64,000 bases of DNA from Octopus bimaculoides (lineage: Eukaryota), in NCBI RefSeq assembly GCF_001194135.2, contig NC_068997.1, positions 30,346,528 through 30,410,527 on the forward strand. Reading direction: 5' to 3'. Each line of letters opens with the position of its first letter. Positions within the stretch are counted from its first letter, which is position 1. This document shows, piece by piece, positions 12,131 to 54,200 of the stretch. The position numbers were made by a program, and so were the translations under genes. The notes under the pieces are model-generated. The model worked only from the letters and a program-made list of their open reading frames with translations, was not told the origin of the DNA and searched no databases.

Positions 12131-12254
12131 GTTTGTAATTTATTACTTTTAATTTATTTTCCAGTTTTAGCATAAAAACTTCTATAAAATTTTATTGCTA
12201 TTCTTTAGTAAATATTTCCTTTTTAAAGTTATATATTTATCTTTTGTCTTTTAT

Positions 12255-12970
12255 CTATTACTTGTTTCAGTCATTAGACTGAGAACATTTTGAGACACTA
12301 CCTTGAAGAAGTTCATTTGAGCTAATTGACCCCAGAACTTCCTCTTTTTAAGCTTGGTACTTATTCTGTTGGTCTATTTTGCAAACCACTAAGTTATGGG
12401 GACATGAACACACCAACACTGGTTCTCGAGTGGTGGTGGAGGACATACACAGGCACAAAGAAGTATACACACAAACACACACATATATGTATGTATATTC
12501 ATATATATATCACCATTTAACATCCGTTGTCCATGGGTCGGATGGTTTGACTGGGCTGGCATGCTAGAAGGCTGATGGTTTCTAAAGCAGGATGTCCTTC
12601 CTAACACCAACTACACCAAGAGTGTAATGGGTGCTTTATGTGCCACCTACATGGGTGCCACTTACATGACGACAGGGTGAATTTACATGCCACTGGAATG
12701 GGTGCCAATTTGTGTGACACCAGTATCTGCCACGACTGCAGTTTTGCTCAGCTTGATGGGTTTTCTTCTCAAGCACAACATAATGCCAAAGGTCTTGGTC
12801 ATTTTCAATGGTTTTCTTTTAGTTTCCATCTACCAGATCCTCTCACAAGGCTTTGGTCAGCTGAAGGCTATAGTAGAAGTCAATTGTCCAAAGTGCCATG
12901 CAGTGGGACTGAATCCAAGGACCATGTGCTTGAGAAGCAAACATTTTGCCACATAGCCACTCCTGCACCT
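12255..12970 (-). mobile_element. Nested SINE / RTE-tail repeat cluster
   Basis: SINE tail (TACTTGTTTCAGTCATT), RTE-type tail (CATCCGTTGTCCATG) and SINE head (GTGCCATGCAGTGGGACTGAA), all repeated elsewhere in the window. Confidence 0.75.
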
Positions 12971-16620: not shown

Positions 16621-17041
16621 CTGCCTCTCTCTCTCCCCCTTCGCCCTCCCTCCTNNNNNNNNNNNNNNNNNNNNNNNNNNNCTCCTCCTGCTCCGACTCC
16701 TACTTCTCTGTACTTCTCTTCACTCCTACTTCTCTTCACTCCTACTTCTCTTCACCCCTACTCTTTCTTTCTTCTCTCTTTCTTCTCTCTTTCTCTCTCT
16801 CTCTCTCACTCTCTTACTCTCTTTCTTCTCGCTTTCTCCCTCCTCCCATACCCACCTTCCCCCTCTCTTATATCCACCTTCCCCTTCATCGTCACCCCCT
16901 CCCCTTCATCGTCAACCCTCCCTCATAAGCTCATCCCACCCCNNNNNNNNNNNNNNNNNNNNNNNNNNNNNNNNNNNNNNNNNNNNNNNNNNNNNNNNNN
17001 NNNNNNNNNNNNNNNNNNNNNNNNNNNNNNNNNNNNNNNNN

Positions 17042-17042
17042 N

Positions 17043-17073
<31 letters not shown>

Positions 17074-17223
17074 GATGGGCTGCTTTCAGTTTTTGTCTAC
17101 CAAATCCACTCTCAAGTCTTTGGTCGGCTCGAGTCTATAGTAGAAGACAATTGACCAATGTGGCATGCAACAGGACCTGGAACCATATGGTTGGAAAGCA
17201 AGCACTCACCCATGCCTATGCCC
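17042..17223 (-). mobile_element. tRNA-derived SINE 5' part
   Basis: Reverse complement of the same SINE head and body as 21961-22110. Confidence 0.75.
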
Positions 17224-17228
17224 ACAGA

Positions 17229-17257
17229 ATGGCTGTGTGGTAAGTAGCTTGCTTACC
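17229..17257 (+). mobile_element. 5' fragment (A-box side) of a SINE split by Tx1 insertion; includes TSD copy 1 (17242-17257)
   Basis: ATGGCTGTGTGGT+AAGTAGCTTGCTTACC matches the head of the intact SINE at 32434-32380 (minus strand). Confidence 0.85.
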
Positions 17258-18896
17258 TGGCTTCTGGTTACCCAGAGTGCATTTGGTTTGTCATTTGTGT
17301 TGGATGTTGGATGTTGGTTTTTGTTGCTGCTTTCAGGATAGAGACAATGTACTCAGACTTTAGCGGGTCTGAGTTGTCTTCAGCAGAGGAGGAGCTAGTA
17401 AAGGCAGTGGAAAAAGTGGACAAAATATTGGAGAAAACGGAGTTTTGCTGAGGCTGCAGAGGTGAAGAGAAGGCTAGTCGGCCTAGCTAGATTGAAGGAG
17501 TATGGCAAGATGAGAGAAGGTGGGTGGCGACGTGAAGTTATCACCACCTAAAAGAATTATGGAGAACATGGGGGGGGGGGAAACATTACTTACAAGGTAC
17601 ACTCGTTGGAAAACAAGAAATTTGAACAGGTAGAAGGAGAAAAAATAGAAAAGGCACTGAGAAAACAATCGAGCCAAATTACGTATAATACAAGAGGAAG
17701 TAAATACGGGATGGTAGTTATCCAGTTTAGGACAGTGGAAGAGGCAAAGAGGGTGGTGAGTATGGCGATGAGGACAGAAGAAGTACTGCTGCTGCCCACA
17801 TATCTTGGAAGAAAGACTTCCANNNNNNNNNNNNNNNNNNNNNNNNNNNNNNNNNNNNNNNNNNNNNNNNNNNNNNNNNNNNNNNNNNNNNNNNNNNNNN
17901 NNNNNNNNNNNNNNNNNNNNNNNNNNNNNNNNNNNNNNNNNNNNNNNNNNNNNNNNNNNNNNNNNNNNNNNNNNNNNNNNNNNNNNNNNNNNNNNNNNNN
18001 NNNNNNNNNNNNNNNNNNNNNNNNNNNNNNNNNNNNNNNNNNNNNNNNNNNNNNNNNNNNNNNNNNNNNNNNNNNNNNNNNNNNNNNNNNNNNNNNNNNN
18101 NNNNNNNNNNNNNNNNNNNNNNNNNNNNNNNNNNNNNNNNNNNNNNNNNNNNNNNNNNNNNNNNNNNNNNNNNNNNNNNNNNNNNNNNNNNNNNNNNNNN
18201 NNNNNNNNNNNNNNNNNNNNNNNNNNNNNNNNNNNNNNNNNNNNNNNNNNNNNNNNNNNNNNGGGCCACATTAAAGCAAACTGCCCCCTGCAGAGGCAAA
18301 TAACAGAAGAAGCGGTTGTGGAGACGGAGGTGAAAAGAGAAGAACAGACGGACGGAAGGAGCAAGGAGGAAGAGTGGATAGTGACAGAGAGTAAAAGAAA
18401 GAAGAGGAAGAAAAGGAAGAACAGCAAGTATGATGTGGTACCCCAGTCCAACTCCATCCCACCCAAGACCACTCAGACCCACCCTCCCCATACAGACACC
18501 AAACCCACCCACTCCATTTCCCCACAAGAAAAAAGAAAAAGAAAGAACAGACGCCACAAAATTTAGAAGACCCCCTCCCAGTGAAAAAGGTTACGAATGC
18601 ATGGAGAGAACGATGTCATTAAGTGATGGAGAAAGGTTAGAACTGAAAGGAAAAAAGGACTTTGGACTCAGAGGCAGTGAGTGGTGTTACTCAGTGTGGG
18701 GTGAGTAGCACACTCTTCATTATATCATTTTCAGATGTCATTCATGTTATATTTTAATTTGTTCTTCATGTTCATTTTCATGTATCATTCATTATATCAT
18801 ATTTCATTATTTTTATAGTTTTACTTGTTATATGTCCCCACATGTGTTGTAGTGTCCCCCTCTGTGTAATGCCTTTATGGCAATTTACAAGAAATA
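17258..18896 (+). mobile_element. ORF1-only Tx1-derived element (unit 1 of tandem in SINE)
   Basis: Bounded by TSD copies. ORF1-like frame (MVVIQFRTVEEA...LLPTYLGRK; GHIKANC knuckle), Lys-rich tail, and 3'UTR ending CCCTCTGTGTAATGCC...AATAA. No ORF2 in the sequenced part; about 440 N inside. Confidence 0.75.
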
Positions 18897-18912
18897 AAGT
18901 AGCTTGCTTACC

Positions 18913-21900
18913 TCTGTTTTGGAGAGAGCTTCAGGTTACTGTTGCTGCCATTTTGCTCTTACTTTCGAGCAAGTAAGACGTACCTTGCTATTGTGAATTA
19001 ACCGTTTGTGTTCGTTGGAGTACTGTTTTTGTGGATTTACGTGTTTTTTAAAATTATTTTTATGCTTCCCTATCAGGAAGGTAAGGTGTAAAAACCTTTT
19101 AAACTTCAATTGGGCATTGAAACTTTTTTCAAGCCATTGTAAGCTTTTCTTGTGTCACACACCCCCAAGGGGGGAGCAAGATTTGTTGTTATTGCGAATT
19201 AACTATTTGTGTTCNNNNNNNNNNNNNNNNNNNNNNNNNNNNNNNNNNNNCTTGTTATATGTCCCCACATGTGTTGTAGTGTCCCCCTCTGTGTAATGCC
19301 TTTATGGCAATTTACAAGAAATAAAGTAGCTTGCTTACCTCTGTTTTGGAGAGAGCTTCAGGTTACTGTTGCTGCCATTTTGCTCTTACTTTCGAGCAAG
19401 TAAGACGTACCTTGCTATTGTGAATTAACCGTTTGTGTTCGTTGGAGTACTGTTTTTGTGGATTTACGTGTTTTTTAAAATTATTTTTATGCTTCCCTAT
19501 CAGGAAGGTAAGGTGTAAAACTTCTTTGTGCAATTGAAACTCTTTTCAAGCCGTCATAGGCAATTTTTCTTGTGCCACGCCCCGTAAAGGGGGGTGGTGA
19601 GGCAAGATCTGAACTAATTTGGTGAACATTTTACAAACCTGTTTTTTGCGCATCTATAATTTTGACCGAGCATGTCGGTCGAAATTTTAAAAGAAATAAT
19701 TTCCAAAGAACGCACTCTCAATGAAAGTAGTGTTAATAGCAAAAAATTTTCTGACGTTGCCGCCATGGAAACGAAGACCATTGTGTTGAACAATGAAGAT
19801 TTGGAAGAATATTTTTCCAGGATGAAGGAGGAAAACGGGGATATCAAGATAACGCCCATGTTCGATGTTGAAGAAATAGAGAAGAAAACTGTGGTCTTCA
19901 GATCCTTCTGTATGGAAGGAAGATGTTTTAAATATCTCAATGAAAATGTTATTGAGAAATGCCTCGCCCCTGTGTGGAATTATATTACTCATATCGCAAA
20001 GGGTGAGGCTTTTTCAACCACTGGAGTCTGTTTCAAGATGGAGAAGTTGGCGCACGAGTACTCGGTTAGCCCCTTGAAGACGAAGGAGGTAGCACTTCTG
20101 CCCTCTTACAGGGGAAGTCGTACTTCTCGTGTGAGGGTGATGGAGGTGCCGCTGGAATTAGAGAAAATACAATTCCTTCATATTCCATGCTCTGTCTCCC
20201 AATACTGGACAGGGCAGAGCATTTCAGCCATCATCCAAGGGGCACCGGCAGACATGGAAAACCTTCTGGACTGGATACGCGTGGGTGAAAAAGTTACCCT
20301 CCGAATTGAAGTGGAGGGTAAAAAGGTTACTTGCTTCGAATGTGAAAAAAAAGGCCACATTCGAAGCGATTGTGAAGAAAAAAAGAAGAGGAGGAAAAGA
20401 AGAATAAAGAGAAAAAACTGTTACAGACACCAGTCCCCACAACTATTCAAAGCATCCCCAAACCCACACATAGACCAGTCCCCACAAAAACAAATGCTCC
20501 CACTCCTTCTGTTGTGATGCTACCCCCAAAGAAAGCAATGAAAAGACCCAACCCCAGCATACATAAGCCCCCACATTAATAAAACCCCCCGCCCACCTGA
20601 TTTCTGAGGCACCTTGTGTTTCAAACATAACGTCCCCAGACGACACCATGGAGGTATCCGAAGGGGAATTCATGACAATTTGCAAGCGTTTACATGCACC
20701 TTCTCCACCCACATCCCCCACACACCACAGATAACGAAAAAAAGACCCTGCTCCACCACACTGGAAAAAAAAACACAAAAGAACAATGAAGAAATAATTT
20801 TAACTGGATATGACTCTAAAGACGATTATTTGGAAGACAAATTCCAGAACACCATACAGTGAAACTTTTGCATCCAAATAACGACACACATATGAGACGT
20901 GCCTGGATGGGGGAAAAACCTATACAGGTAGAGAAAAATTGGAGTGAGGTAACCAGTAAGGTGACTGCTCTAACCCAGACTTGGTCTGGGCAAGCACCTC
21001 TAGCTTTACCTGGATGTGGTCACTGCATGTCCAATTCTACCTTCCAAGGTTAGCGTCCTTAACAGACATAGGTACATGGATCAAGCAGAGACCTAGGCTG
21101 GGGGATTGACAATTGAAATGCTGACAGGTACTTCTGCTACTCTCTCAGGCAGGCAATGCTGGCAACAGAAGTTCCACCGCTGATTTTATAGTGGGTTAGT
21201 GGGATTCACGTCTGAAGACGCCTTGGGGGAGACCCTGGGCTACGATGAAAATCAGTTAATCAACCTGTTCAGGAGAACGTTTGGGCCGGGGTATCTGGAT
21301 AATTACCAGAAATCCCTGGCTTGACAGGGCTTCCATGTGGCGTTACCTGTTCATGATAAGCTGTCAAGGCACGGAAGTGCTATCTCGCCGTCATGTTTGA
21401 GGTGTGGGCAGGACAGAGAAACCATCTTGCATGCATTCGTGGGATGTCCAGAATTGTCGGGATTGATAGTTTTCACAGAACAACTGCTGTCATCGATGGA
21501 AAGAGTACAGCTATTAGCTGAGTCAAACATCAAGATTGTGCCGCATTCTTCCCTTAGCAGGGAAAGGAAGGCCTGTTTTTACTGCATAGTAGCTATTTTA
21601 ATAGAAATGGTATGGAAGACACGTGTGAAAGACACTTCAGCAGCAAGATCAGGCTGGAGAAGCAGTACCTGTCATATGAGAAATTCGAGAAGAGATGGAA
21701 GCCTGTGGTAAGAAAACTGGGAGTGATTCGCACCAAGTAAGTGGAGCCCTGGAAGAAAAGCATAGGCCCTACCCTGATGCCGGACGCCTTTCCTTCGGTG
21801 TCAGATTGCATTACGCAATGTATTTTATTTTATTTTATTTTAAATTTTTCATATTTTTAATCGATTTATAATAACGCTTTAAGCTACTTCACCATTCTAT

Positions 21901-21960
21901 GTTTGTCTGTCCTTGTTTGTCCTCTCTGTATTATGCCTACATGGTTAATTTATTGAAATA
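18913..21960 (+). mobile_element. Internally deleted Tx1-like element (unit 2 of tandem in SINE)
   Basis: 5'UTR, ORF1 at 19672-20517, ORF2 C-terminal remnants only (QVEKNWSEVTSKV; CLRCGQDRETILHAFVGC), and 3'UTR ending AATA followed by the TSD. Confidence 0.85.
19672..20517 (+). CDS. Tx1-like ORF1 protein (RRM-like region plus CCHC zinc knuckle)
   Basis: 281-aa open frame with CFECEKKGHIRSDC (CX2CX4HX4C); homologous to four other ORF1 copies in the window. It may be a pseudogene. Confidence 0.7.
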   Translation: MSVEILKEIISKERTLNESSVNSKKFSDVAAMETKTIVLNNEDLEEYFSRMKEENGDIKITPMFDVEEIEKKTVVFRSFCMEGRCFKYLNENVIEKCLAPVWNYITHIAKGEAFSTTGVCFKMEKLAHEYSVSPLKTKEVALLPSYRGSRTSRVRVMEVPLELEKIQFLHIPCSVSQYWTGQSISAIIQGAPADMENLLDWIRVGEKVTLRIEVEGKKVTCFECEKKGHIRSDCEEKKKRRKRRIKRKNCYRHQSPQLFKASPNPHIDQSPQKQMLPLLLL

Positions 21961-22101
21961 AAGTAGCTTGCTTACCAACCACATGGTTCCGGGTTCATTC
22001 CCACTGCGTGGCACTATGGGCAAATGTTTTCTACTATAGCCTCAGGCCAACCAAAGCCTTGTGAGTGGATTTGGTAGACGGAAACTGAAAGAAGCCTGTT
22101 G

Positions 22102-22165
<64 letters not shown>

Positions 22166-22338
22166 TTCCCCCAACATTGCTTGACAACCAATAGTGGTGT
22201 TTATGTCCCCTGTAACTTAGCGGTTTGGCAAAAAAGACCGATAGAATAAGTCCTGGGGTCGATTTGCTCGACTAAAAGCGGTGCTCCAGCATGGTCACAG
22301 TCAAATGATTGAAACAAGTAAACGAGTAAAAGAGAGTA
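21961..22338 (+). mobile_element. 3' remainder of the split tRNA-derived SINE (starts with TSD 21961-21976)
   Basis: AAGTAGCTTGCTTACC+AACCACATGGTTCCGGGTTCATTCCC (B-box), internal (GT)n, and the tail GAAACAAGTAAACGAGTAAAAGAG. Confidence 0.9.
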
Positions 22339-32042: not shown

Positions 32043-32434
32043 ACTCTTTTACTTGTTTCAGTCATTTGACTGCGGCCATGCTAGAGCACTGCCTTTAGTC
32101 AAGCAAATCAACCCCAGGACTTATTCCTTGGAAGCCTAGTACTTATTCTATCGATCTCTTTTGCTGAACCGCTAAGTTACGGGGACGTGAAGACGCCAGC
32201 ATTGGTTGTCATGTGATGTTGGGGAGACAAACACAGACACACAAACATACACATAGATATATACATATATACGATGGGCTTCTTTCAGTTTCCATCTACC
32301 AAATCCACTCACAAGGCTTTGGTCGGCCCGAGGCTATAGCAGAAGACACTTGCCCAAGGTGCCACGCAGTGGGACTGAACCCGGCACCATGTGGTTGGTA
32401 AGCAAGCTACTTACCACACAGTCACTCCCACGCC
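32043..32434 (-). mobile_element. Intact tRNA-derived SINE (empty-site control; single AAGTAGCTTGCTTACC at 32412-32397)
   Basis: Reverse complement GGCGTGGGAGTGACTGTGTGGT-AAGTAGCTTGCTTACC-AACCACATGGTGCCGGGTTCAGTCCC..., with the full body and tail. Confidence 0.92.
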
Positions 32435-33229
32435 ATATATNNNNNNNNNNNNNNNNNNNNNNNNNNNNNNNNNNNNNNNNNNNNNNNNNNNNNNNNNNNN
32501 NNNNNNNNNNNNNNNNNNNNNNNNNNNNNNNNNNNNNNNNNNNNNNNNNNNNNNNNNNNNNNNNNNNNNNNNNNNNNNNNNNNNNNNNNNNNNNNNNNNN
32601 NNNNNNNNNNNNNNNNNNNNNNNNNNNNNNNNNNNNNNNNNNNNNNNNNNNNNNNNNNNNNNNNNNNNNNNNNNNNNNNNNNNNNNNNNNNNNNNNNNNN
32701 NNNNNNNNNNNNNNNNNNNNNNNNNNNNNNNNNNNNNNNNNNNNNNNNNNNNNNNNNNNNNNNNNNNNNNNNNNNNNNNNNNNNNNNNNNNNNNNNNNNN
32801 NNNNNNNNNNNNNNNNNNNNNNNNNNNNNNNNNNNNNNNNNNNNNNNNNNNNNNNNNNNNNNNNNNNNNNNNNNNNNNNNNNNNNNNNNNNNNNNNNNNN
32901 NNNNNNNNNNNNNNNNNNNNNNNNNNNNNNNNNNNNNNNNNNNNNNNNNNNNNNNNNNNNNNNNNNNNNNNNNNNNNNNNNNNNNNNNNNNNNNNNNNNN
33001 NNNNNNNNNNNNNNNNNNNNNNNNNNNNNNNNNNNNNNNNNNNNNNNNNNNNNNNNNNNNNNNNNNNNNNNNNNNNNNNNNNNNNNNNNNNNNNNNNNNN
33101 NNNNATGCCTATTTATTTATTATATTACATGTGTATGTTAATGCAGCAGAAACAATTGTTGGATTTTAAGGTGTAATTTAAAACAAAGATATGATTTCTT
33201 CAAACATATTATTTGTTGTTATATATATA

Positions 33230-45252: not shown

Positions 45253-48200
45253 CACCATATATTTCTTTTATTTCGCCACTCACGGTTCAACATAGAGGGG
45301 ATATCACAAGGTCAGACAAATTAACATATAGTGCGATGACAGTGTGATGATAAATATAATGAAATCGAATAAAAATTCTAACAAAATTGAGTAAATAATT
45401 AAAGATATACTTTCTATCATTGGGTTGGTTTACCCACTGCCGTTATTCGGTGTATCCCCTTTTGTCACAGGATGGCTGCAGTTACACATTTCCATTCACT
45501 CACAACTTTCTTAACATGTTCGTCCACCTTTTACCAAACATACTATGTGATAAGTATCACTTCTCCAGCCAGATTTTACTTTTGAGATGATAGTTAAAAT
45601 AACTGACCAACCCCCAGCCGGAGATGAAGGTACCTGAAGCGATCTCTTTTACACATATTTTCCACACTGTCGCTTTCAGCATGGCCACTATGCAGAGAAA
45701 ACAGGCCCTCCTCTTCCCCTTCAGGGAGGTGGGCAGCACGATCTTAATGATAGATTCAGCTGGTAACTACTCTTTCTGTTATTGGTAACAGCTGCTTGAT
45801 ATAGGGTATCACTTCCCTAATCACGTACACTGCACAGTTTCACTGCCCTGCCCGCAACTTTGACAGGTCAGTGAGATGGCACAACCATGCCTTGATAACC
45901 TCTCTTGAACAACTAAGGCCGATCGGTAACACAACCAGACGGGGGATTTCTGGTAATCATCCTGATACTCTGGCCTGAAGGTTCTTTTGAACAGGCTGGT
46001 TAACTGATTTCCATCCAAGTCTAAAGTCGTCTGATTTGAACTCAACTAACCCGCTATAGAAGTCCGTGGTGAAACTCCAGCTGCCAGTATTGCCTGCCCG
46101 GGAGAGTAGCATGAGTGCATGTTGGCACTCTAGCTGCAAGTCACCTAGTCTGGGTCACCGCCTGATCTAAGGACCTAACTTCCAAGGGGAGGTTAGTTAA
46201 GGAAAGAAGATGTTTGTGAGCGGTGACCACACCGGCTCACCATCTAGGTTGAACCAGAGGTGACCAAGCCTTAGCGCAAACTTGCACATCTTCAGCCACA
46301 GTCTCCCTAGCCCGCCCTTTAATAGCTCTTGATGGCAGACAGTGCGCCTTACAAGTGGTGCCTTCTTCCATAAAAAGCGGAAGAGGAGTTGCTCCATCTT
46401 GCTCAGCTACGAATCGGGGCAAGGCTCGATGGTCAGATGGTAGATGCTGACAGATGCTATGTACATCTGCATTACCTCCACCCTCACTAGCAGTGATAAC
46501 GTCCTTCCAGACCAAATCTTGTCCAGATCAAACCAGACCCCTAACATCTTAACTGGACCTTCCGTCCAACGTCCCACGATGCTATTAGATGGCTTCGACT
46601 TGCCCCTCCAGGTGCCGAGTTATAAGCCGACTGACTTAACCTGGTTAATTTTTGTTCCTGCCACCACTTCGTATCTTCTGAAGGCGTTTACTACACAAGG
46701 TAGCTGCCCTTCATCCGACACGATGACGGTGATATTATCTGCATATACTGACGCAGTTCTTCCACAGTTCAGATCATGCAAGATTCCCCCCTAAAGTCTC
46801 CAACCTTCGCAGCAATGGCTCAAGAGCCAACACATGCAAAAGCAGAGACGGGAACATCGAACAAAGCACTCAATGTCAAATAGTTTTGAATAGAAACCGT
46901 TCACCCAGATGATGGACTTGATGTTGCTGTACAAACAGTGATCCAGCTTCGGAAAGTCAGGCCCAGCCTGTCTACCCCGCGGACCGCTGCCAGGTACCGA
47001 TGGTCAACCTTATTGAATACTTTAGACTGGTCTAAATATACCAGTGGCCTACCTTTGCCCGAAATTTTACTCACCCGCTCTAAAGTGTAGCGTATGAAGT
47101 GGAGGTTGTCGTGTATCATCCTGCTGGGGATGGTGCATATTTGCACATCCCCAACAAGACTATCCATGACCCGTGCCAACCTCTTTGCTAGCACCTTGGC
47201 CAAAATCTTTAACTCTGTGTTTAACAGAGTTATGGGCCTAAAGTTACAAATAATGTTCCCCTTGCTTGAGTCCTTTCTGATCAGTGTCACCACCCCCGGC
47301 TCACAACTTTGGGGATTTTTCCAGTATCCTGCAAGTTGGAATAGACTCTGGCCTGTAGGTGATTGAACAAGTCTGGCATAGTTTTGAAAAACTCGTAAGG
47401 TAGACCATCAAGTCCCGACAACCTGTCTTGTGGAGAGACATTCTGCCATGACTTCCTCAGCTGTGATCGCTCCTTCACAGTACCCATCCTTTTGTGCTGA
47501 GAGACATGGGCTCAACGTGATCCAGCGCTTCACTCCCCCCGAACAACTCGGCAAAATACTTGCAAAAGACCACTTGTATCTCATCTTATCCTTCGGTCAA
47601 ACGCTTCTGTTCATTGATGAAAAATCCAATTGTGGTATCATTGCTATGTTGGGTCTCTACTATGCGGGCCCACCTAGCAATGTTAATTCCCTCTCAGCTC
47701 AATGCACGTATTCTAATTTGAACTCTGCATTCCTCATGTTTGGCTTTTTTAATCAGCAAATGAGGGATTGTTCTCAATGTTATTAAATTACCCTCCTTCT
47801 TGTTCTTCTCCCTCTCCTCGTTGGTCTCTGGCGATGGGTCAATCAATTTTGGCATGTCACTTAGCTTGTGAATGCCCTCCAGCCTCCTGTCCTTCAGTTG
47901 TTTGTACAGTTTTTCGTCTATGTGGGCACAGCCTGTTCCTCTAAATGACTTTGTCATATGGTGCTTACTTACTATTTCATGTATACAGATGTCTTTTATG
48001 TCATAGTTTATTAGTACCATTCTGTCCGTGGGGTCAAGAGGCAGAGATTAAAATAATCTTTGTTTGAAATGCTCCGCTTTTTTATGGGTCCATTTTTTGT
48101 TGGGGCTTGGGGTTGGGAGGGAGTTGGGGACACAGTGTTTCTCCTTGCCCGTTTCCGGGAGATAATCTGAAATTCCCCCTCCTGTTCGACGACCTCCATG

Positions 48201-49434
48201 CCATCACTAGGAGTGGGAATTTTATCCATATTCTCTTGTACAGCAATCTTCTCCACTGGTTTTCCCACTGACTTCTGCTTTGGTTTCTTCTCTTTCTTCT
48301 TTTTTTTGCCTTCTTCCTTGTTTGTTGTCAAGAGGTGCCTCTGTGTTGGGAGGGTGACATTCTACTCGCAAGTTGCCCTTCTACCCACACTTAAAACAGC
48401 ATGCCTTCCTCCCTTTGAATTGTACTTTTAAAACAATGTCCTCTCCAGCCAACATCCTGTCTGGTATCTTTTCCAGATATTCAGGTATTGCCTGTATCAC
48501 AATCTCAATAGTGTGCCCGAACCATTTGGGAGTTGGGGCAGAATGGGTGATTTGTAGTATGGAGACTTTTTCTTCTCTCAAATAACATAGGCCCACCACC
48601 ATACAGGTGGCGTCCAACTCCAACTTCAATTTTTATCCAGGACGTTCTACGTCCTAGCTATGATGGTAGAAGTACCACCTCGTTAGTTTTCAAAGTCAGC
48701 ACCAAGTGCTGTCTTGCTCTTTCTGCGGTTTCAAATCTCACCTCAATTGAGGCGAACTTCCTGCCTTGGGCCACATAAGTCACATGTTTCCACACCGGCC
48801 CAAGGCATTTCTCAATTTTTTCCTTTGCTATGTTGGAAATTTTCTTCTTTACCACATCATATGTCTTGTATATGATGATCTTGTTCCGCGTTTATGTGGT
48901 TATGTCGCTTATGGAGATGGACATCACCTCCGTCTCCATCCATTGACAACATACCATAGAATGTTTGGTATTCGGAACGCATAATATCCAATTTTTCTTT
49001 TTGCACACTGGCCACTGCAGAAAAATTTTTAATACCATGATCGCTTGTGGCATTTTCCTCGCGAGCCATACGCTCCTTTACGATTTCCACATTTGGAATC
49101 AACATTTTCAAATAAACACAGAATTTCTCACAAAGTGACAAACGAGAAATTGTTTAAACAAATTCTCCCAAAGAAGAACTTAAAAGTTCAAGGATTCAAT
49201 CCCTTCCCTCATAGGGTGAAGGATACAATTCAAAAAGTTTAAACAAGTTTCAATAACAATGTTCTTTCCCCCCGTAATGCAACAAATTTCAACAACGGCC
49301 TGCCAAGCAGGTGACAATTTTTAACAAACTACAATCACAAACAACAATACACAAGAGGTTCAACAACAATTTTAACAATACATACGCAAATAAAAACACA
49401 GCGCACTGTACCTTACAATTCTTACGTCAAACTT
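45253..49434 (-). mobile_element. Tx1-like element, decayed (5'UTR, ORF1, RT, zinc knuckle, 3'UTR; no APE recognised)
   Basis: ORF1 pieces at 48000-49141 (IEVRFETAE; CCFKCG). RT motifs NFRPITLLNTELKILAKVLA, LDQSKVF and AYADNITV. It ends CCCCTCTATGTTG...AATAAAAGAAATA. Confidence 0.88.
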
Positions 49435-49453
49435 GCACATATCATACTGCACC

Positions 49454-51292
49454 AATTCTTTAAGCATTCAGGCTTTTACACAGAGGGGACAGAAAAGGAC
49501 AGACAGAATATCACAGTGGGGGCAAAAAACACAAAATGAATGAAAATGAGAAAAGTGTTATATAATAATGAAGATGAAATGGCTGCATGAGCCCCACTCT
49601 TTTGCAGTACCATTTGAACGTTCTTACAAACAGTTTATAATCTTTTCTTCTTTCCTTTTGTTTTTTCTATTAACATGGTTTTTTTTTTTTCAAGAAATTT
49701 TACTTACTCTTTTTTTTTAAAGTTCATGTATGGTTCTAAATCTCTATATTCCATCACCGGCGGCAGTTTGTCAAACTCTACCTCAACTCCCAGTGGATCA
49801 ATATCCCTTTCAAACATTTCCTTTAACCTGTTATACCTCTCTTTATCTATAACAACAATTGCTTTCACATTTTCCATGTAAATTTCCATAGGCAACATAA
49901 TCCGTATTATGGATTTAAACTTCATTATCTTTTTTCCTATTGCAGTGCTCTTGGCGAATGTCACAAAATTCCATTTATGCTTCTTCAGCTTTCTTGCTTG
50001 TTTGTTTTTCCTTGCTCCAGTCTTGGCGCCTTCACTCTGTCTTTATCCTCCTCCGTTTTAGTTAGTGTCACTGCTTCACTTTTGTGCTGTTATCTCTCTA
50101 CACCAACCGAATCTTCCTCCTCTGCTGGTGTAGCTAGTACCCTTGCTACTGTTACCTCTTTCTCAAGATCCTCCTCAAGCTCCCTCTCAACCTTCCTCTC
50201 AACCTCTCCATCCTCATCCCTCTTCTTTTTGTGCCTCTCCAGTGGAGAGCTTACTCCTTCCTTTCCCTTTCACTTTTCAACCACGTCGAATGCTTTCTTC
50301 ACCACTACCGTCTCCCTCACACCATCCTGCACCACTTCATCCACCCTCTCCTGCTCCTCAGATTGCTCCATCCATCCCTCTTCCCCTCTCCAGGGGCACC
50401 TCACCCTCATATGGCCCTCCTCCTCGCATTGATAACAAACATGAGGCTCACATTCCACTACCACTCCCAGCGCCTTTTCTCCTGGCAAAACCTCCTCCGC
50501 CGCAACTTTGTTCAAGTCTCTCAAACCCGCTTGTATGGCCGCCTCCACGCCACAACCCCAACAATTTGACCATTTGGCTCTCATCACCTTAAGCATCTTT
50601 GTGTCCTCCTCCATGTCAAACATTACCGCTTCCACCAACCACGCTTCATCCATTTCCGGGGGCACCCTTCCCACTCTCACCCCGGCAATACGCTTGCTAC
50701 AGCATGTCGGCAAAAGTACCCATTCTTCCGTCGTCACAGCTACAGTGGAGTGCTCTATTGCATCATCTTCAGTCGTGAATTGCACCTCCACTGTGCCACA
50801 CCCCACTCCTGCGACAAAAGTGATGAACCTCCCAACCTCCGCCAAGCACTCCTCAACAGCTTTGACAGTTGCAACTCTGACTCCTCTCGATGACACCCTC
50901 AATACTCCAGACATCACAGTTCCCCTCATCACACTACCCGCCAAATCCTCCAGTGGCGTCAACTTCAAAGTACTCCACAATCCTTCAGCCTCCTCGGCCC
51001 CACACCCCCTCAGGAACCTCCAAAGCACCAGAGTCCACTCCTATTTCAGCTGCTGCTGCACAACGGTACACCCAGCTGGCATTTGTTCCATCCTTCCTCC
51101 CCCTCAAGCTTTCAGACACAAATCAACAAACTCATACATAAAAACAGCAATTTCAACAACCAACAATCGTAGGCATAACCATGAGGGAAGACTCCCAACA
51201 AATACACTATAAGAATTATAACACCACCTACCTCCACGGAATCACAAGGATCTCAAAACAGAATCCCAAGTATTAACACACCATATTGTACA
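49454..51292 (-). mobile_element. ORF1-only Tx1-derived element, gap-free
   Basis: ORF1 at 51028-50270 (TVEVQFTTE...LLPT; CYQCEEEGHMRVRC), Glu/Lys-rich extension, then 3'UTR ending CTGTCCCCTCTGTGTAAAAGCC; no APE or RT motifs. Confidence 0.8.
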
Positions 51293-51339
51293 TCACATAC
51301 CATACTGTACCTTGCACTGTCAGTATGAAGTGCCTTTAT

Positions 51340-54200
51340 AAGGTTTAGGACAGTTCACTTGCTATCTCACAGGGTTGTCAGAACTTCACCACAACAGTTT
51401 ATAATATTGTGGCTTCCCTTCTTGCCATATAGAGCAGTTCCTACAAATTTGTTTCACATTTTCCAATGAATATGGAAGATTTCTACTATGGGTGAAATGA
51501 TGAAGGCACACTACACCAGAATGGCACAGTGCTGCATGTAACTCATAATGTGAATGTGAACTGATTGCTGAACAGCGGACCCTAGTGAATGCATCTGGAT
51601 CCTGGGCGATAGTGAATATCATAGGAGTATGGAGATAATGCAATGTGCCATCTCGTAGTTTTATCATTTTAAATTTTGCTCGTCAGTTTATAATTATACA
51701 CGAATGCAACAGAACGTTGATCAGTAATTAATGTGAAATGTCTACCGAGAAGAAAGTAAGTGTCTCCAATGATGAATTGCTTGGGCTTCCTTTTCAACAG
51801 AAGAGTGGTACTGTTTGCTACCTTGTAGTGTGCGAGAATGGAATGCAACTGGTCCACCTCAACATCCACCTAAACAGTGAATGGGATATTCTCCTCTACT
51901 ATTTGAATGGTAGCATTAGCTAGTTCTATCTTCACGGACTCGAATACCTTTACTTGCTGACTGTTTAGAGGAAATTTTGATACGTTATTGATAGGATATA
52001 TTTCGTCAGAAAATTTGGTGATCAACTTAGCATAATAAGAAAACATACCGATTATTCATTTTAATGATTTCTGGTCAGTTGGTGTAGGAAGATTGAGGAG
52101 TAGAGCAAGTCTTTCTGAGGGTATTGTGTGAGATATAATATCCAAGAAAATCTAGAGTTGTTGTTCAGTAAACACATTTCTCTTCATTCATTGTGAACCC
52201 CTCAATTTTATTTGTCATTTCAAACTTTTCTAGATTATTATCATGGTCATTTTGATCTTTCCCACATATGGTTAAATTGTCTATGAATGAGAACATATCT
52301 CACAACTTATATTTTCTCCCAAAGTCATCCATTATACGTTGGAAATATGCACTGCCATTAGTTACTGCAAATGGCATCCTGTTATACTGCCATAATTTAC
52401 TGTCAGCTTCAAAGGCAGTGACTTGTTGATCTTTCTCTGATAGAGGAATCTGGTGTCATGCTGAACGTAAGTCTATAGAACTGTAGACCATATATTGAGC
52501 AATAGTCTTTACTAACTCATTGATTTTAGAAAGAGGGTTAGCATCAAGTTGTGTATATTTGTTAACTGTCTCTGAATAGTCAATCGCCATTCTTCACATT
52601 GTTCTTTCTTGAACAACTAGCACTTGTGACCTCCAAGGAGAATTATTGGTTTCAATAATGTTCACATCTGCTAGGCGGCGTATTTCCATCTTGATAAACT
52701 CATGATCATGTTTCGAGTATTTTTACAATTTGGCTGTATTAGGTTTACAGTCAGTCCTCCCTGAGATGTGCGAAGAGATTTGGGAGATCAGTTTCCATAG
52801 CTGTTAGTGCAATAAACATTAATGGTGGTTTTTGTCCTCCATATTGTATGGTAATACTTTCATGCTGTTCTTCAAAGTCAGTACCCAGAATTAGGTCAGT
52901 GCACAAGATTCTGAGGATGTACAGTTTCACATCTGATTATCTAGGGTAAATGAAGCAGTGAAATATTTTTTGGATTCCACTGAAAGAAATGCAGAAGTCA
53001 TATCAATGATGTTCTTCGATTTGACTGTTTTGATGTTGAGTATGTTCATTAGCTTCTCACTGATGAAACTCTTGTCTGTGCTACCACTTTCAATTAATGC
53101 TTCGATTCTGCAAGTATTGCTCAGTAAACCTACTGATGCTGATACTGTCGAACGTAGATCATATTTGTCATCTTTATGTGTCACAGTTGCTGTGTTGCTC
53201 TTACAAAGTTTTCCAAAATGGCCTATATTTTTTGTATTTGTGACAGACTGCTTCACCCACAGGACAACAACTCCATGGGTGTGTGAAATAGCCACAAAAC
53301 CAGTATCGAGATGGTTTTCCTCTTTGGATTGCAGAAGAGTGTTCTTTCAGCTTTGGGAATCAATTGGCTTGGCTATGGTGGGTACCGTTGGACTGAAATT
53401 GGTACACTCAGAGTTTGGAAAGACATTGGAACTCTGTTGCACCACATCTAGCAAACATGCTTGATCATAAGTTGTACTGAGGTTGACACTTTTGTTTTTT
53501 AATAGTTTTGTCTTATCTGACTCGAAATGAATTGATTTATAAAGGCATCTCGAATCATTTCAGACCAATACTGCTCAGCACTCACTGCAACAAAGCCACA
53601 GTCTTTTGCTAGTATTTTGAGTTCTGGTCTAGAGAATCTCCAGATTTCTGTTTCCTTGTGGCCAAAAGATGGCATCCCATTATGATGTTCTTTGGTTTAC
53701 TGTACACACTCTTTAGTGTATTTACAGCTTGTTTATAATTCTTAACTTCACTAATGAATTCGTATACATTTGGTTCCAAATAATTAAACAAAGGATAGAG
53801 TTTATCGATAATCCTACCTTCTTGCCCAAGTAGTGAGTCTATAAAGTTGGTGAAAGTTCTAAAACCAATGATCCAAGGTCTTGTCAGCATTTGTGGGGAT
53901 TGGGTCAACATTCAATCTGTCTGGTTTCAAGTATTTTTCCATATCTGGTATCCTTCCCCAATTCGTACTTGTCTTTCCATTAATTTCTTTCTCTATAGAA
54001 TATTCAACAACTTCTTCAAGATTTCAAAATTAGTTTCTTTGATTGTTATGCATGACCAGTAATTCCAGGTTCAAAGAAACTATTTTCCAGTCATAATCCA
54101 AAACAATAAAGCATCACATAATGTTATTCGTGATATTCTCGAATCAGGAATAACATTATTATAATCGATTCATGATTATGTTATTCTAAATGGCAACTCA

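What the first reader, a model, noticed from the sequence alone, without database searches (positions are those of the whole stretch)
17229..22338. Tx1-like retroelements stacked inside a tRNA-derived SINE with a perfect 16-bp target-site duplication: a possible SINE-targeting retrotransposon
Seen: AAGTAGCTTGCTTACC occurs at 17242-17257, 18897-18912 and 21961-21976, and again at 19324-19339 next to a gap. The first copy is preceded by the SINE head (ATGGCTGTGTGGT) and the last is followed by the rest of the SINE (AACCACATGG...B-box...tail). An intact SINE at 32434-32043 (minus) has the 16-mer only once, giving an in-window empty site. Each internal copy sits exactly between one element's AATAAA-like 3' end and the next element's 5' end. 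Established: Tx1-clade elements are often sequence-specific (U2 snRNA, tRNA arrays, 5S, microsatellites, DNA transposons) and re-insert in tandem because the TSD regenerates the target. Inference: this family targets the region between the A and B boxes of an abundant octopus SINE, using another retroposon as a safe haven and disabling its Pol III promoter. I do not know of this target being described.
Basis: partly seen in the sequence, partly recalled or inferred. Interest (0 to 1): 0.88.

Follow-up and report, generated by a model that had tools for sequence, protein, structure and literature searches.

The report
Site-specific LINE copies stacked in SINE
Two, possibly three, defective L1/Tx1-type retrotransposons sit head-to-tail at the same nucleotide inside one SINE copy, each bounded by the same 16-base duplication, which suggests a retrotransposon that homes to this SINE sequence: a new target for a known behaviour, seen here at one locus only.

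Summary
AAGTAGCTTGCTTACC ("T") occurs at 17242, 18897, 19324 and 21961 (+) and once in an intact SINE at 32397-32412 (-). Chance expects 0.02 copies. The outer copies continue into the two SINE halves, and the intact copy is a true empty site.

The layout is SINE head - T - A - T - [B fragment, gap, repeat] - T - C - T - SINE body.
- A keeps ORF1 only.
- C keeps ORF1 plus the ORF2 C-terminus, without endonuclease or RT.
- Their ORF1s are only 31% identical, so these are separate insertions at one nucleotide.

The 19324 copy is weak evidence. It lies in a 270-bp exact repeat of the sequence left of the 36-N gap, so it may be assembly redundancy.

Relatives (elements D and E in this window, Argonauta hians loci, one metagenome contig) share the 3' end ...GAAAT. 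What follows it differs by family ((CTAT)n, (ATT)n, other repeats). T is therefore target sequence, not an element terminus.

A 16-bp TSD with tandem copies sandwiching it is already published for Tx1-Mar/SINEU-3.

Verdict: most likely a sequence-specific Tx1-like LINE lineage with a new target, a SINE. Family-wide targeting could not be tested because no octopus genome was reachable. Tx1 clade membership is inferred, not shown by phylogeny.

The parts
17043..17210 (-). Older, diverged SINE copy, head-to-head with the interrupted SINE. It is context, not part of the nested structure.
   Evidence: 79% identity to SINE positions 26-203; alignment.
17227..17241 (+). Head of the interrupted SINE, including the A-box-like TGGCTGTGTGG (17230-17240).
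   Evidence: 17227-17257 matches SINE positions 14-44 at 93.5%; sequence read.
17242..17257 (+). T copy 1 (AAGTAGCTTGCTTACC), continuous with the SINE head.
17258..18896 (+). Element A. It has a 5' UTR, a degenerate ORF1 (RRM-like region plus CCHC, with the gap at 17823-18262 inside it), no ORF2, and an AT-rich 3' UTR ending ...GAAATA. It is an ORF1-only, HAL1-like non-autonomous derivative.
   Evidence: ORFs; collinearity with C ORF1; 3' end alignment.
18897..18912 (+). T copy 2, between the A 3' end and a C-type 5' end.
18913..19214 (+). 'B': a C-type 5' UTR fragment that runs into the gap. Its first 181 bp are identical to C, then identity falls to about 75%. It ends in what looks like the start of a second 5' UTR monomer.
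19251..19339 (+). Exact copy of the A 3' end (19251-19323) plus T copy 3 (19324-19339). It is part of the 270-bp exact repeat across the 36-N gap and may be assembly redundancy.
19340..21960 (+). Element C. It has a 5' UTR (19340-19671) and an intact ORF1 (19672-20517, 281 aa, CCHC at 20329-20373). The ORF2 remnant (about 20898-21738) covers only the post-RT region and zf-RVT, with frameshifts. Endonuclease and RT are deleted. The 3' UTR (21739-21960) ends ...GAAATA.
   Evidence: zf-RVT 36.9 bits; zf-CCHC weak. 67% nucleotide identity to element E over 569 bp.
21961..21976 (+). T copy 4, continuous with the rest of the SINE.
21977..22327 (+). Remainder of the interrupted SINE: B-box-like GGTTCATTCCC (21992-22002), core, internal (TA)n/(TG)n repeat and tail.
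   Evidence: 21961-22327 matches SINE positions 29-398 at 77%.
32043..32440 (-). Intact SINE copy that serves as the empty site. T occurs once, at 32397-32412.
45261..51300 (-). A second head-to-tail pair of related elements at a different site. D (about 51300-49455) is ORF1-only with a 252-aa ORF1. E (about 49454-45261) has ORF1 plus a degenerate ORF2 with RVT_1. Both have the same type of 3' end. The 5' limit of D is approximate.

Best explanation
A lineage of L1-superfamily, Tx1-like non-LTR retrotransposons integrates sequence-specifically into a 16-bp site of an abundant SINE. The site lies between the A-box-like and B-box-like motifs.

Proposed mechanism:
1. The endonuclease of an autonomous partner, which is not in this window, nicks the bottom strand at GGT^AAG (bottom strand ...CTACTT^ACCAC).
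2. The freed 3' end primes reverse transcription of an element RNA that ends ...GAAAUA.
3. The top strand is cut 16 bp downstream, at ...CTTACC^AACCAC.
4. Repair duplicates the 16 bp.
5. Each insertion regenerates the target, so later copies land beside earlier ones in the same orientation. This builds head-to-tail arrays with one T between neighbours.

The copies here are defective. A has ORF1 only, and C lacks endonuclease and RT. They were probably mobilised in trans through the conserved 3' UTR end.

Shown: the positions, the TSD, the empty site, the element anatomy, the shared 3' end and the L1-superfamily affinity. Inferred: the nick positions and strand order, the endonuclease specificity, trans-mobilisation, and that the whole family uses this SINE site genome-wide.
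For: (1) There are five exact T copies against 0.02 expected. The outer copies are continuous with the SINE halves, and an intact SINE has T once.

(2) A and C are different elements. Their ORF1s are 31% identical, their 5' ends are unrelated, and BLAST finds no nucleotide similarity between them. Both are bounded at the same nucleotides, in the same orientation as the SINE. This requires at least two integration events at one site.

(3) Every junction lies inside a contig, not across a gap.

(4) T is not an element terminus. D, E, four Argonauta hians copies and a metagenome contig share the end ...TGGC.AA.AAAGAAAT. What follows is different in each: (CTAT)n plus an identical 179-bp flank in two copies, (ATT)n, or other sequence.

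(5) The elements are LINEs of the L1 superfamily. C has zf-RVT, E has RVT_1, and the CX2CX4HX4C knuckle is present in ORF1. The closest relative, P0003, matches human L1 ORF2p at 7e-43 against R2 at 1e-22.

(6) There is published precedent. The Tx1 clade is target-specific, and its targets include DNA transposons and LTR elements. [quoted passage not shown]

(7) L1-Tx1 is an annotated, recently active LINE group in octopus (PMC13282606).
Against: Only one SINE copy is occupied, so all insertions share one locus. No other copy of A or C exists in the window, and no octopus genome sequence could be reached. Family-wide specificity is therefore an extrapolation.

The window comes from a gapped assembly. 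One T copy lies in a 270-bp exact repeat across a gap.

A and C carry no endonuclease or RT, so neither the enzyme nor the clade can be examined directly. No autonomous partner was found.

The A-T-C unit could have arrived in a single event, as a read-through or template-switched RNA. That would move the second insertion to another locus.
Confidence: 0.7

Rival explanations
1. Single composite insertion. A read-through transcript of a pre-existing A-T-C array, or a template switch from C RNA to an A RNA carrying T at its 3' end, was inserted once into this SINE. The stack then records one event here, not repeated homing at this locus.
For: All T copies are identical and the array is compact. 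An AATAAA hexamer spans each element/T junction (18893-18898, 21957-21962), so transcripts would be expected to run into T. Template switching and 5' extensions are documented for LINE machinery (PMC4494074).
Against: The internal T must still come from a donor in which A was next to the same 16-mer. The outer T pair is a TSD in a SINE. This rival therefore still implies that the family associates with the site. It changes the number of events at this locus, not the specificity.
Confidence: 0.12
2. Chance nesting plus assembly artefact. A non-specific LINE landed once in a SINE, and the rest of the stack was produced by a short-read assembler or scaffolder joining repeats.
For: There are ten N-gaps in the window and two inside the feature. 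A 270-bp exact duplication flanks the 36-N gap.
Against: The four junction types lie inside gap-free contig sequence: head-T-A5', A3'-T-C5' (seen twice with different continuations), and C3'-T-body. A 16-bp overlap is too short to cause a chimeric join. Even a mis-scaffolded locus would show two unrelated elements each abutting the same 16-mer at the same nucleotides.
Confidence: 0.06
3. The true target is not the SINE as such. It is a sequence motif or hairpin whose primary carrier is something else, such as the parental tRNA gene or another repeat. SINE copies are then hit only because they retain it.
For: Tx1-group families that target tRNA and other small-RNA genes are known (Dewa, Keno, Mutsu; PMC4494074). 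T lies in an anticodon-arm-like imperfect hairpin. Only 2 of the 4 SINE heads in the window keep T exactly.
Against: ARAGORN and Rfam find no tRNA gene or tRNA-like match in the window or in the SINE. The SINE is by far the most abundant carrier one would expect: SINEs make up 11.6% of the O. vulgaris genome (PMC13282606).
Confidence: 0.1

Closest known systems
Tx1-Mar LINEs and SINEU-3 in crocodilians (Kojima 2015, PMC4494074)
   Same: The Tx1-type machinery targets one position of another transposon family. The TSD is 16 bp (AGGTTCCCATCAGCAT), and tandem copies sandwich one TSD as a result of sequential insertion. Non-autonomous passengers use the same target.
   Different: The target there is a Mariner DNA transposon, here it is a SINE. 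The TSD sequences are unrelated. The passengers there are snRNA-headed SINEs, here they are ORF1-bearing deleted LINEs. Specificity there rests on hundreds of copies, here on one locus.
Tx1L in Tx1D (Xenopus laevis), the founding Tx1 element
   Same: A LINE with an APE-type endonuclease that inserts at one defined site inside another mobile element (PMC4494074).
   Different: The host element there is a piggyBac-type DNA transposon. I did not compare sequences, because no Tx1L reference was available and Christensen et al. 2000 is not held.
Dewa, Keno and Mutsu (Tx1-group families in tRNA, U2 snRNA and 5S rRNA genes)
   Same: They home to Pol III or small-RNA gene sequences. The site here lies between the A and B boxes of a Pol III-type SINE head.
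   Different: Their targets are functional multicopy genes. Here the target is a retroposon derived from, or resembling, such a gene. tRNA homology of the SINE head was not detectable.
Kibi and Koshi, and the (TTCC)n/(TTTC)n-specific crocodilian Tx1 families
   Same: The nearest relatives I could fetch end in ...AAAGAAAT directly followed by (CTAT)n or (ATT)n. This is microsatellite targeting of the kind seen in Kibi and Koshi.
   Different: A and C are followed by a unique 16-mer of a SINE, not by a microsatellite.
HAL1 ('half-L1') elements of mammals (from my own knowledge: Bao and Jurka 2010)
   Same: Elements A and D keep the 5' UTR, ORF1 and 3' end but have no ORF2.
   Different: HAL1 derives from mammalian L1 and is not site-specific. 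Whether A and D form amplified families could not be tested.
R1 and R2 in rDNA, and other co-transcribed site-specific LINEs
   Same: Precise integration, and a possible role for target-derived sequence at the RNA 3' end in priming. Co-transcription is said to strengthen specificity (PMC4494074). Here AATAAA spans the element/T junction.
   Different: R2 uses a restriction-like endonuclease. The RT of relatives here is closer to L1 than to R2. No HDV-like ribozyme or other Rfam family was found.

Membership tests
Tx1 group (L1 clade) non-LTR retrotransposons | The RT domain clusters with Tx1 references (Tx1L, Keno, Kibi and others) in a phylogeny. | not testable with these tools
   A and C have no RT. 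No named Tx1 reference sequence was available, and the source names are uninformative. The only positive result is that relative P0003 is closer to human L1 ORF2p (7e-43) than to R2 (1e-22).
Tx1 group (L1 clade) non-LTR retrotransposons | An APE-type endonuclease at the N-terminus of ORF2. | tested here: inconclusive
   It is deleted in A and C and collapsed in E. More distant homologues of E's RT carry PF03372 (P0058, P0087 and others).
Tx1 group (L1 clade) non-LTR retrotransposons | An L1-type ORF2 C-terminus with a zinc-binding zf-RVT domain. | tested here: met
   The C ORF2 remnant scores 36.9 bits for PF13966 against a cutoff of 27.5. P0001 and P0003 also carry PF13966.
Tx1 group (L1 clade) non-LTR retrotransposons | ORF1 with an RNA-binding region followed by a CCHC zinc knuckle (type I ORF1). 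| tested here: met
   CX2CX4HX4C is read directly in C (CFECEKKGHIRSDC), D (CYQCEEEGHMRVRC) and partly in A and E. The Pfam zf-CCHC match is below cutoff (17 bits). The RRM fold was not tested.
Tx1 group (L1 clade) non-LTR retrotransposons | Sequence-specific integration, shown by many independent copies in the same target. | tested here: inconclusive
   Two, perhaps three, different elements sit at the same nucleotide of one SINE copy. A genome-wide census was impossible.
Tx1 group (L1 clade) non-LTR retrotransposons | Head-to-tail arrays that sandwich one TSD. | tested here: met
   head-T-A-T-C-T-body. Precedent.
tRNA-derived SINE (SINE2) | Internal Pol III A and B boxes at tRNA-like spacing. 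| tested here: met
   By reading, TGGCTGTGTGG matches TRGCNNAGTGG at 10 of 11 positions and GGTTCAGTCCC matches GGTTCGANNCC at 9 of 11. They are about 33 nt apart in the intact copy.
tRNA-derived SINE (SINE2) | Recognisable tRNA homology or a cloverleaf in the head. | tested here: not met
   ARAGORN found 0 genes. Rfam gave no tRNA match at E<=1. The MFE fold is not a cloverleaf (z = -0.65).
tRNA-derived SINE (SINE2) | A dispersed multicopy element of a few hundred bp. | tested here: met
   There are four copies with heads in the 64-kb window. The core is 75-82% identical to sequences in Argonauta hians loci.
HAL1-like ORF1-only LINE derivative (elements A and D) | Keeps the 5' UTR, ORF1 and LINE 3' end, lacks ORF2, and is amplified as a family. 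| tested here: inconclusive
   The anatomy is met for A and D. The 440-N gap in A lies within ORF1 by collinearity. Amplification could not be tested.

The most novel reading that the evidence does not exclude
A lineage of Tx1-like LINEs, together with its ORF1-only and RT-less passengers, homes specifically to an anticodon-arm-like hairpin between the A and B boxes of the most abundant SINE of octopods. One retroposon would then be using hundreds of thousands of copies of another as a safe harbour and inactivating each copy it enters. The element/target junction itself completes the AATAAA signal, so transcripts would carry target sequence for priming.
Probability: 0.55. Interest if true: 0.55.

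Novelty: new member of a known kind. Interest (0 to 1): 0.42.

Why it matters
If a genome-wide census confirms it, this adds SINEs to the list of targets used by sequence-specific Tx1-group LINEs. That list so far covers small-RNA genes, microsatellites, satellites, DNA transposons and LTR elements.

It would give a clean case of a LINE using a very abundant SINE as a neutral landing pad in a genome where SINEs and LINEs each make up more than 10% (PMC13282606).

It would also supply a natural endonuclease with a defined 16-bp-spaced double nick site, and a set of ORF1-only passengers for studying trans-mobilisation.

For annotation, such arrays split SINE copies and create false 'composite' repeat families.

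Tried and rejected
(1) Protein search with C ORF1 gave no hit at E<=1e-3. ORF1 is too divergent, or octopus is absent from the collection.

(2) Search with the C ORF2 C-terminus gave only two hits, at 66% and 56% identity, on ~1.15-kb contigs that end before any 3' junction.

(3) An exact look-up of the 44-aa ORF spanning the A3'-T-C5' junction is not on record.

(4) A metagenome scan for the junction 21-mer AAATAAAGTAGCTTGCTTACC gave 0 hits. The control scan for T alone gave more than 120 hits. All of those listed were chance matches in unrelated contexts, with no octopus SINE. The zero is therefore uninformative.

(5) T-like sites with up to 8 mismatches over 32 nt are absent from the two Argonauta loci.

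(6) ARAGORN and Rfam gave no tRNA, no ribozyme and nothing relevant.

(7) A full-text search for the sequence string and for SINE-targeting Tx1 found nothing. Christensen et al. 2000 is not held.

(8) I rejected the idea that T is part of the element terminus. Relatives share the ...GAAAT end but not T, and the empty site has T once.

(9) I rejected recombination between two occupied SINEs. It would leave SINE body and head between A and C, not a bare 16-mer.

(10) I rejected Pol III read-through from the SINE as the transcription route. C starts TCTGTTTTGG, which contains a Pol III terminator-like T run (inference).

Full report
**Observation**

The 16-mer AAGTAGCTTGCTTACC (T) occurs exactly at 17242, 18897, 19324 and 21961 on the + strand and once at 32397-32412 on the - strand. 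No further site matches with up to two mismatches, and 0.02 matches are expected by chance.

The copy at 17242 is preceded by the SINE head. 17227-17257 matches positions 14-44 of the intact SINE at 93.5%. The copy at 21961 runs on into the SINE body (21961-22327 matches positions 29-398). The intact SINE at 32043-32440 (-) reads ...TGTGTGGT-T-AACCACATGG... with T once. It is a genuine empty site, and T is target sequence that has been duplicated.

**Anatomy**

Read 5' to 3' on the + strand, the region contains:
- An older inverted SINE (17043-17210).
- The SINE head, with the A-box-like TGGCTGTGTGG (17230-17240).
- T.
- Element A (17258-18896).
- T.
- A 302-bp C-type 5' UTR fragment, 'B' (18913-19214).
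- 36 N.
- A 73-bp A-type 3' end (19251-19323).
- T.
- Element C (19340-21960).
- T.
- The SINE body, with the B-box-like motif at 21992-22002, ending at 22327.

Element A has a 5' UTR, a degenerate ORF1 and an AT-rich 3' UTR, but no ORF2.

Element C has an intact 281-aa ORF1 with a CX2CX4HX4C knuckle. Its ORF2 remnant covers only the post-RT region and the zinc-binding C-terminus (PF13966, 36.9 bits), with frameshifts. The endonuclease and RT are deleted.

A and C share no nucleotide similarity detectable by BLAST, and their ORF1s are 31% identical. They are different elements, not copies of one insertion. Both end in ...GAAAT-A immediately before T, and neither has a poly(A) tail.

**The gaps**

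The 440-N gap (17823-18262) lies inside A's ORF1. The sequence before it aligns to C ORF1 residues 81-152 (E 1e-9), and the sequence after it starts at residue 228, the knuckle. The two sides are therefore collinear parts of one ORF1, with about 75 codons (about 225 bp) missing. The frame cannot be assessed, because the gap length is nominal.

The 36-N gap is different. 19251-19520 is a 100% copy of 18824-19093 (270 bp). After that the two sequences abruptly drop to about 75% identity with indels, and B ends in what looks like the start of a second 5' UTR monomer. Perfect identity next to abrupt divergence is what unmerged contig ends give, whether from haplotypes or from a multi-monomer 5' UTR. 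I therefore treat B and the T copy at 19324 as unproven.

The robust structure is head-T-A-T-C-T-body. All four junction types lie inside gap-free sequence.

**What the elements are**

A second pair of related elements lies on the - strand:
- D (about 51300-49455) is ORF1-only, with a 252-aa ORF1 that includes CCHC.
- E (about 49454-45261) has ORF1 plus a degenerate ORF2 with RVT_1.

C's ORF2 remnant is 67% identical in nucleotides to E's over 569 bp.

A search with E's stitched RT found 179 proteins. The best is from the octopod Argonauta hians (P0003, 47% identity, RVT_1 plus zf-RVT). P0003 matches human LINE-1 ORF2p in the PDB at 7e-43, against R2 proteins at 1e-22. The group therefore belongs to the L1 superfamily.

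Several features fit the Tx1 group, which is the L1-type group annotated as recently active in octopus (PMC13282606). These are the CCHC-type ORF1, the lack of a poly(A) tail and the target behaviour described below. I could not run an RT phylogeny, because A and C have no RT and no named Tx1 reference was available. Clade membership is therefore inferred.

**T is not an element terminus**

I aligned the 3' ends of A, C, D and E with four Argonauta copies and read a JGI metagenome contig separately. They show a conserved terminus: an AT-rich UTR, then ...CTCTGTGT..GCC...TGGC.AA.AAAGAAAT.

What follows differs by family:
- Two Argonauta copies are followed by (CTAT)n and then the same 179-bp sequence at 99% identity.
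- Another is followed by TTAATTACTTATTTA.
- The metagenome contig is followed by C(ATT)n.
- D and E are followed by a diverged GGTRCAGTATGRTATGTG-like motif.
- A and C are followed by A+T.

This fixes the element boundary at ...GAAAT(A). It shows that T is not a shared terminus. It also shows that the group as a whole is target-specific, including microsatellite targeting of the Kibi/Koshi kind.

**Why this implies specificity**

Two unrelated elements are bounded at the same two nucleotides, in the same orientation relative to the SINE. This needs at least two integration events at one site, either here or in a donor locus if A-T-C arrived as one read-through or template-switched RNA. Either way, A and C have each been joined to the same 16-mer. 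Random insertion cannot give that. A 16-bp overlap cannot cause a chimeric assembly join. Recombination between two occupied SINEs would leave SINE sequence between A and C, not a bare T.

The pattern is also published. [quoted passage not shown]

**Mechanism (inferred)**

The proposed steps are:
1. A bottom-strand nick at GGT^AAG.
2. Target-primed reverse transcription from an RNA ending ...GAAAUA.
3. A top-strand nick 16 bp downstream, at CTTACC^AAC.
4. Fill-in that duplicates T and regenerates the target.

Three details read from the sequence bear on this:
- T lies in an imperfect hairpin, TGTGTGGTAAGT/GCTTACCA..CACA (z = -1.7). Both predicted nicks are followed on their own strand by (A)ACCACA. 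One endonuclease specificity could therefore make both cuts.
- The hexamer AATAAA is completed only by joining the element end to the first AA of T (18893-18898, 21957-21962). Transcripts should therefore extend into T and could pair with the nicked target, as proposed for co-transcribed site-specific LINEs (PMC4494074).
- The extra A between GAAAT and T is the same in A and C, which fits templated rather than random addition.

A and C lack the enzymes, so they must have been mobilised in trans, presumably through the conserved 3' end.

**What could not be done**

The decisive test is a genome-wide census of flanks, and it was out of reach.
- ORF1 and junction-ORF look-ups found nothing.
- The ORF2 C-terminus found only two short foreign contigs.
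- The metagenome scans contain no octopus SINE among the hits listed, so the zero junction hits mean nothing.

The SINE head is not recognised as a tRNA by ARAGORN or Rfam. Only the box motifs and their spacing support a Pol III-type head.

**Comparison and novelty**

In how it works, this matches Tx1-group site-specific LINEs, most closely Tx1-Mar/SINEU-3. It differs in its target. Known Tx1 targets are U2, U5, 5S and tRNA genes, microsatellites, satellites, DNA transposons and LTR retrotransposons (PMC4494074). I found no report of a SINE as a Tx1 target. That search covers only open-access text, and Repbase Reports are not included.

I rate this a new member of a known kind. It is of moderate interest and rests on one locus in a gapped assembly.

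Noticed in passing
window 45261-51300 (-), with 51386-53400 (-): A second head-to-tail pair of related LINE derivatives, D (ORF1-only) then E (ORF1 plus degenerate RT). It lies directly downstream of a Gypsy-like pol remnant (RT, RNase H, integrase HHCC finger). A diverged GGTRCAGTATGRTATGTG-like motif recurs upstream of D, at the D/E junction and after E's 3' end. This could be an old TSD-sandwiched array at another target, or shared 5' ends.
   Followed up: partly
window 17258-18896 (+) and about 49455-51300 (-): Elements A and D keep the 5' UTR, ORF1 and LINE 3' end but have no ORF2. This is a 'half-LINE' (HAL1-like) architecture that appears twice in 64 kb, each time immediately upstream of an ORF1+ORF2-type element.
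   Followed up: partly
window 18893-18898 and 21957-21962: The AATAAA hexamer is formed only across the junction of the element end (..GAAATA) and the first AA of the 16-mer. Polyadenylated transcripts would therefore be expected to include target-derived sequence.
   Followed up: no
window 17233-17257 plus 21977-21986; intact copy 32387-32418 (-): The insertion site lies in an imperfect palindrome (12-bp stem with a 2-nt bulge). Both inferred nick sites are followed on their own strand by (A)ACCACA.
   Followed up: partly
window 18975-19214 and 19402-19600: The C-type 5' UTR looks monomeric. B ends with a second unit (GCAAGATTTGTTGTTATTGCGAATTAACTATTTGTGTTC) that resembles the start of the first (GTAAGACGTACCTTGCTATTGTGAATTAACCGTTTGTGTTC). 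Copy-number variation of such monomers may be why the assembly broke here.
   Followed up: partly
L125 12787-12965 and 18896-19074; L124 12260-12300 and 12630-12660; L126 2000-2105: Argonauta hians and metagenome relatives end in ..GGC.AATAAAGAAAT followed by (CTAT)n or (ATT)n. Two Argonauta copies about 6.1 kb apart have the same 179-bp sequence after the microsatellite, which suggests a repeat-specific target there too.
   Followed up: partly
window 12254-12963 (-): Another SINE copy carries about 320 bp of extra sequence (12489-12807) between the core and the internal microsatellite. It could be a longer subfamily or a nested insertion. Its T region has 8 mismatches over 32 nt and is unoccupied.
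   Followed up: no
window 17043-17241: Two SINE copies lie head-to-head only about 16 bp apart, and the older one is cut by the 100-N gap at 16943-17042.
   Followed up: no
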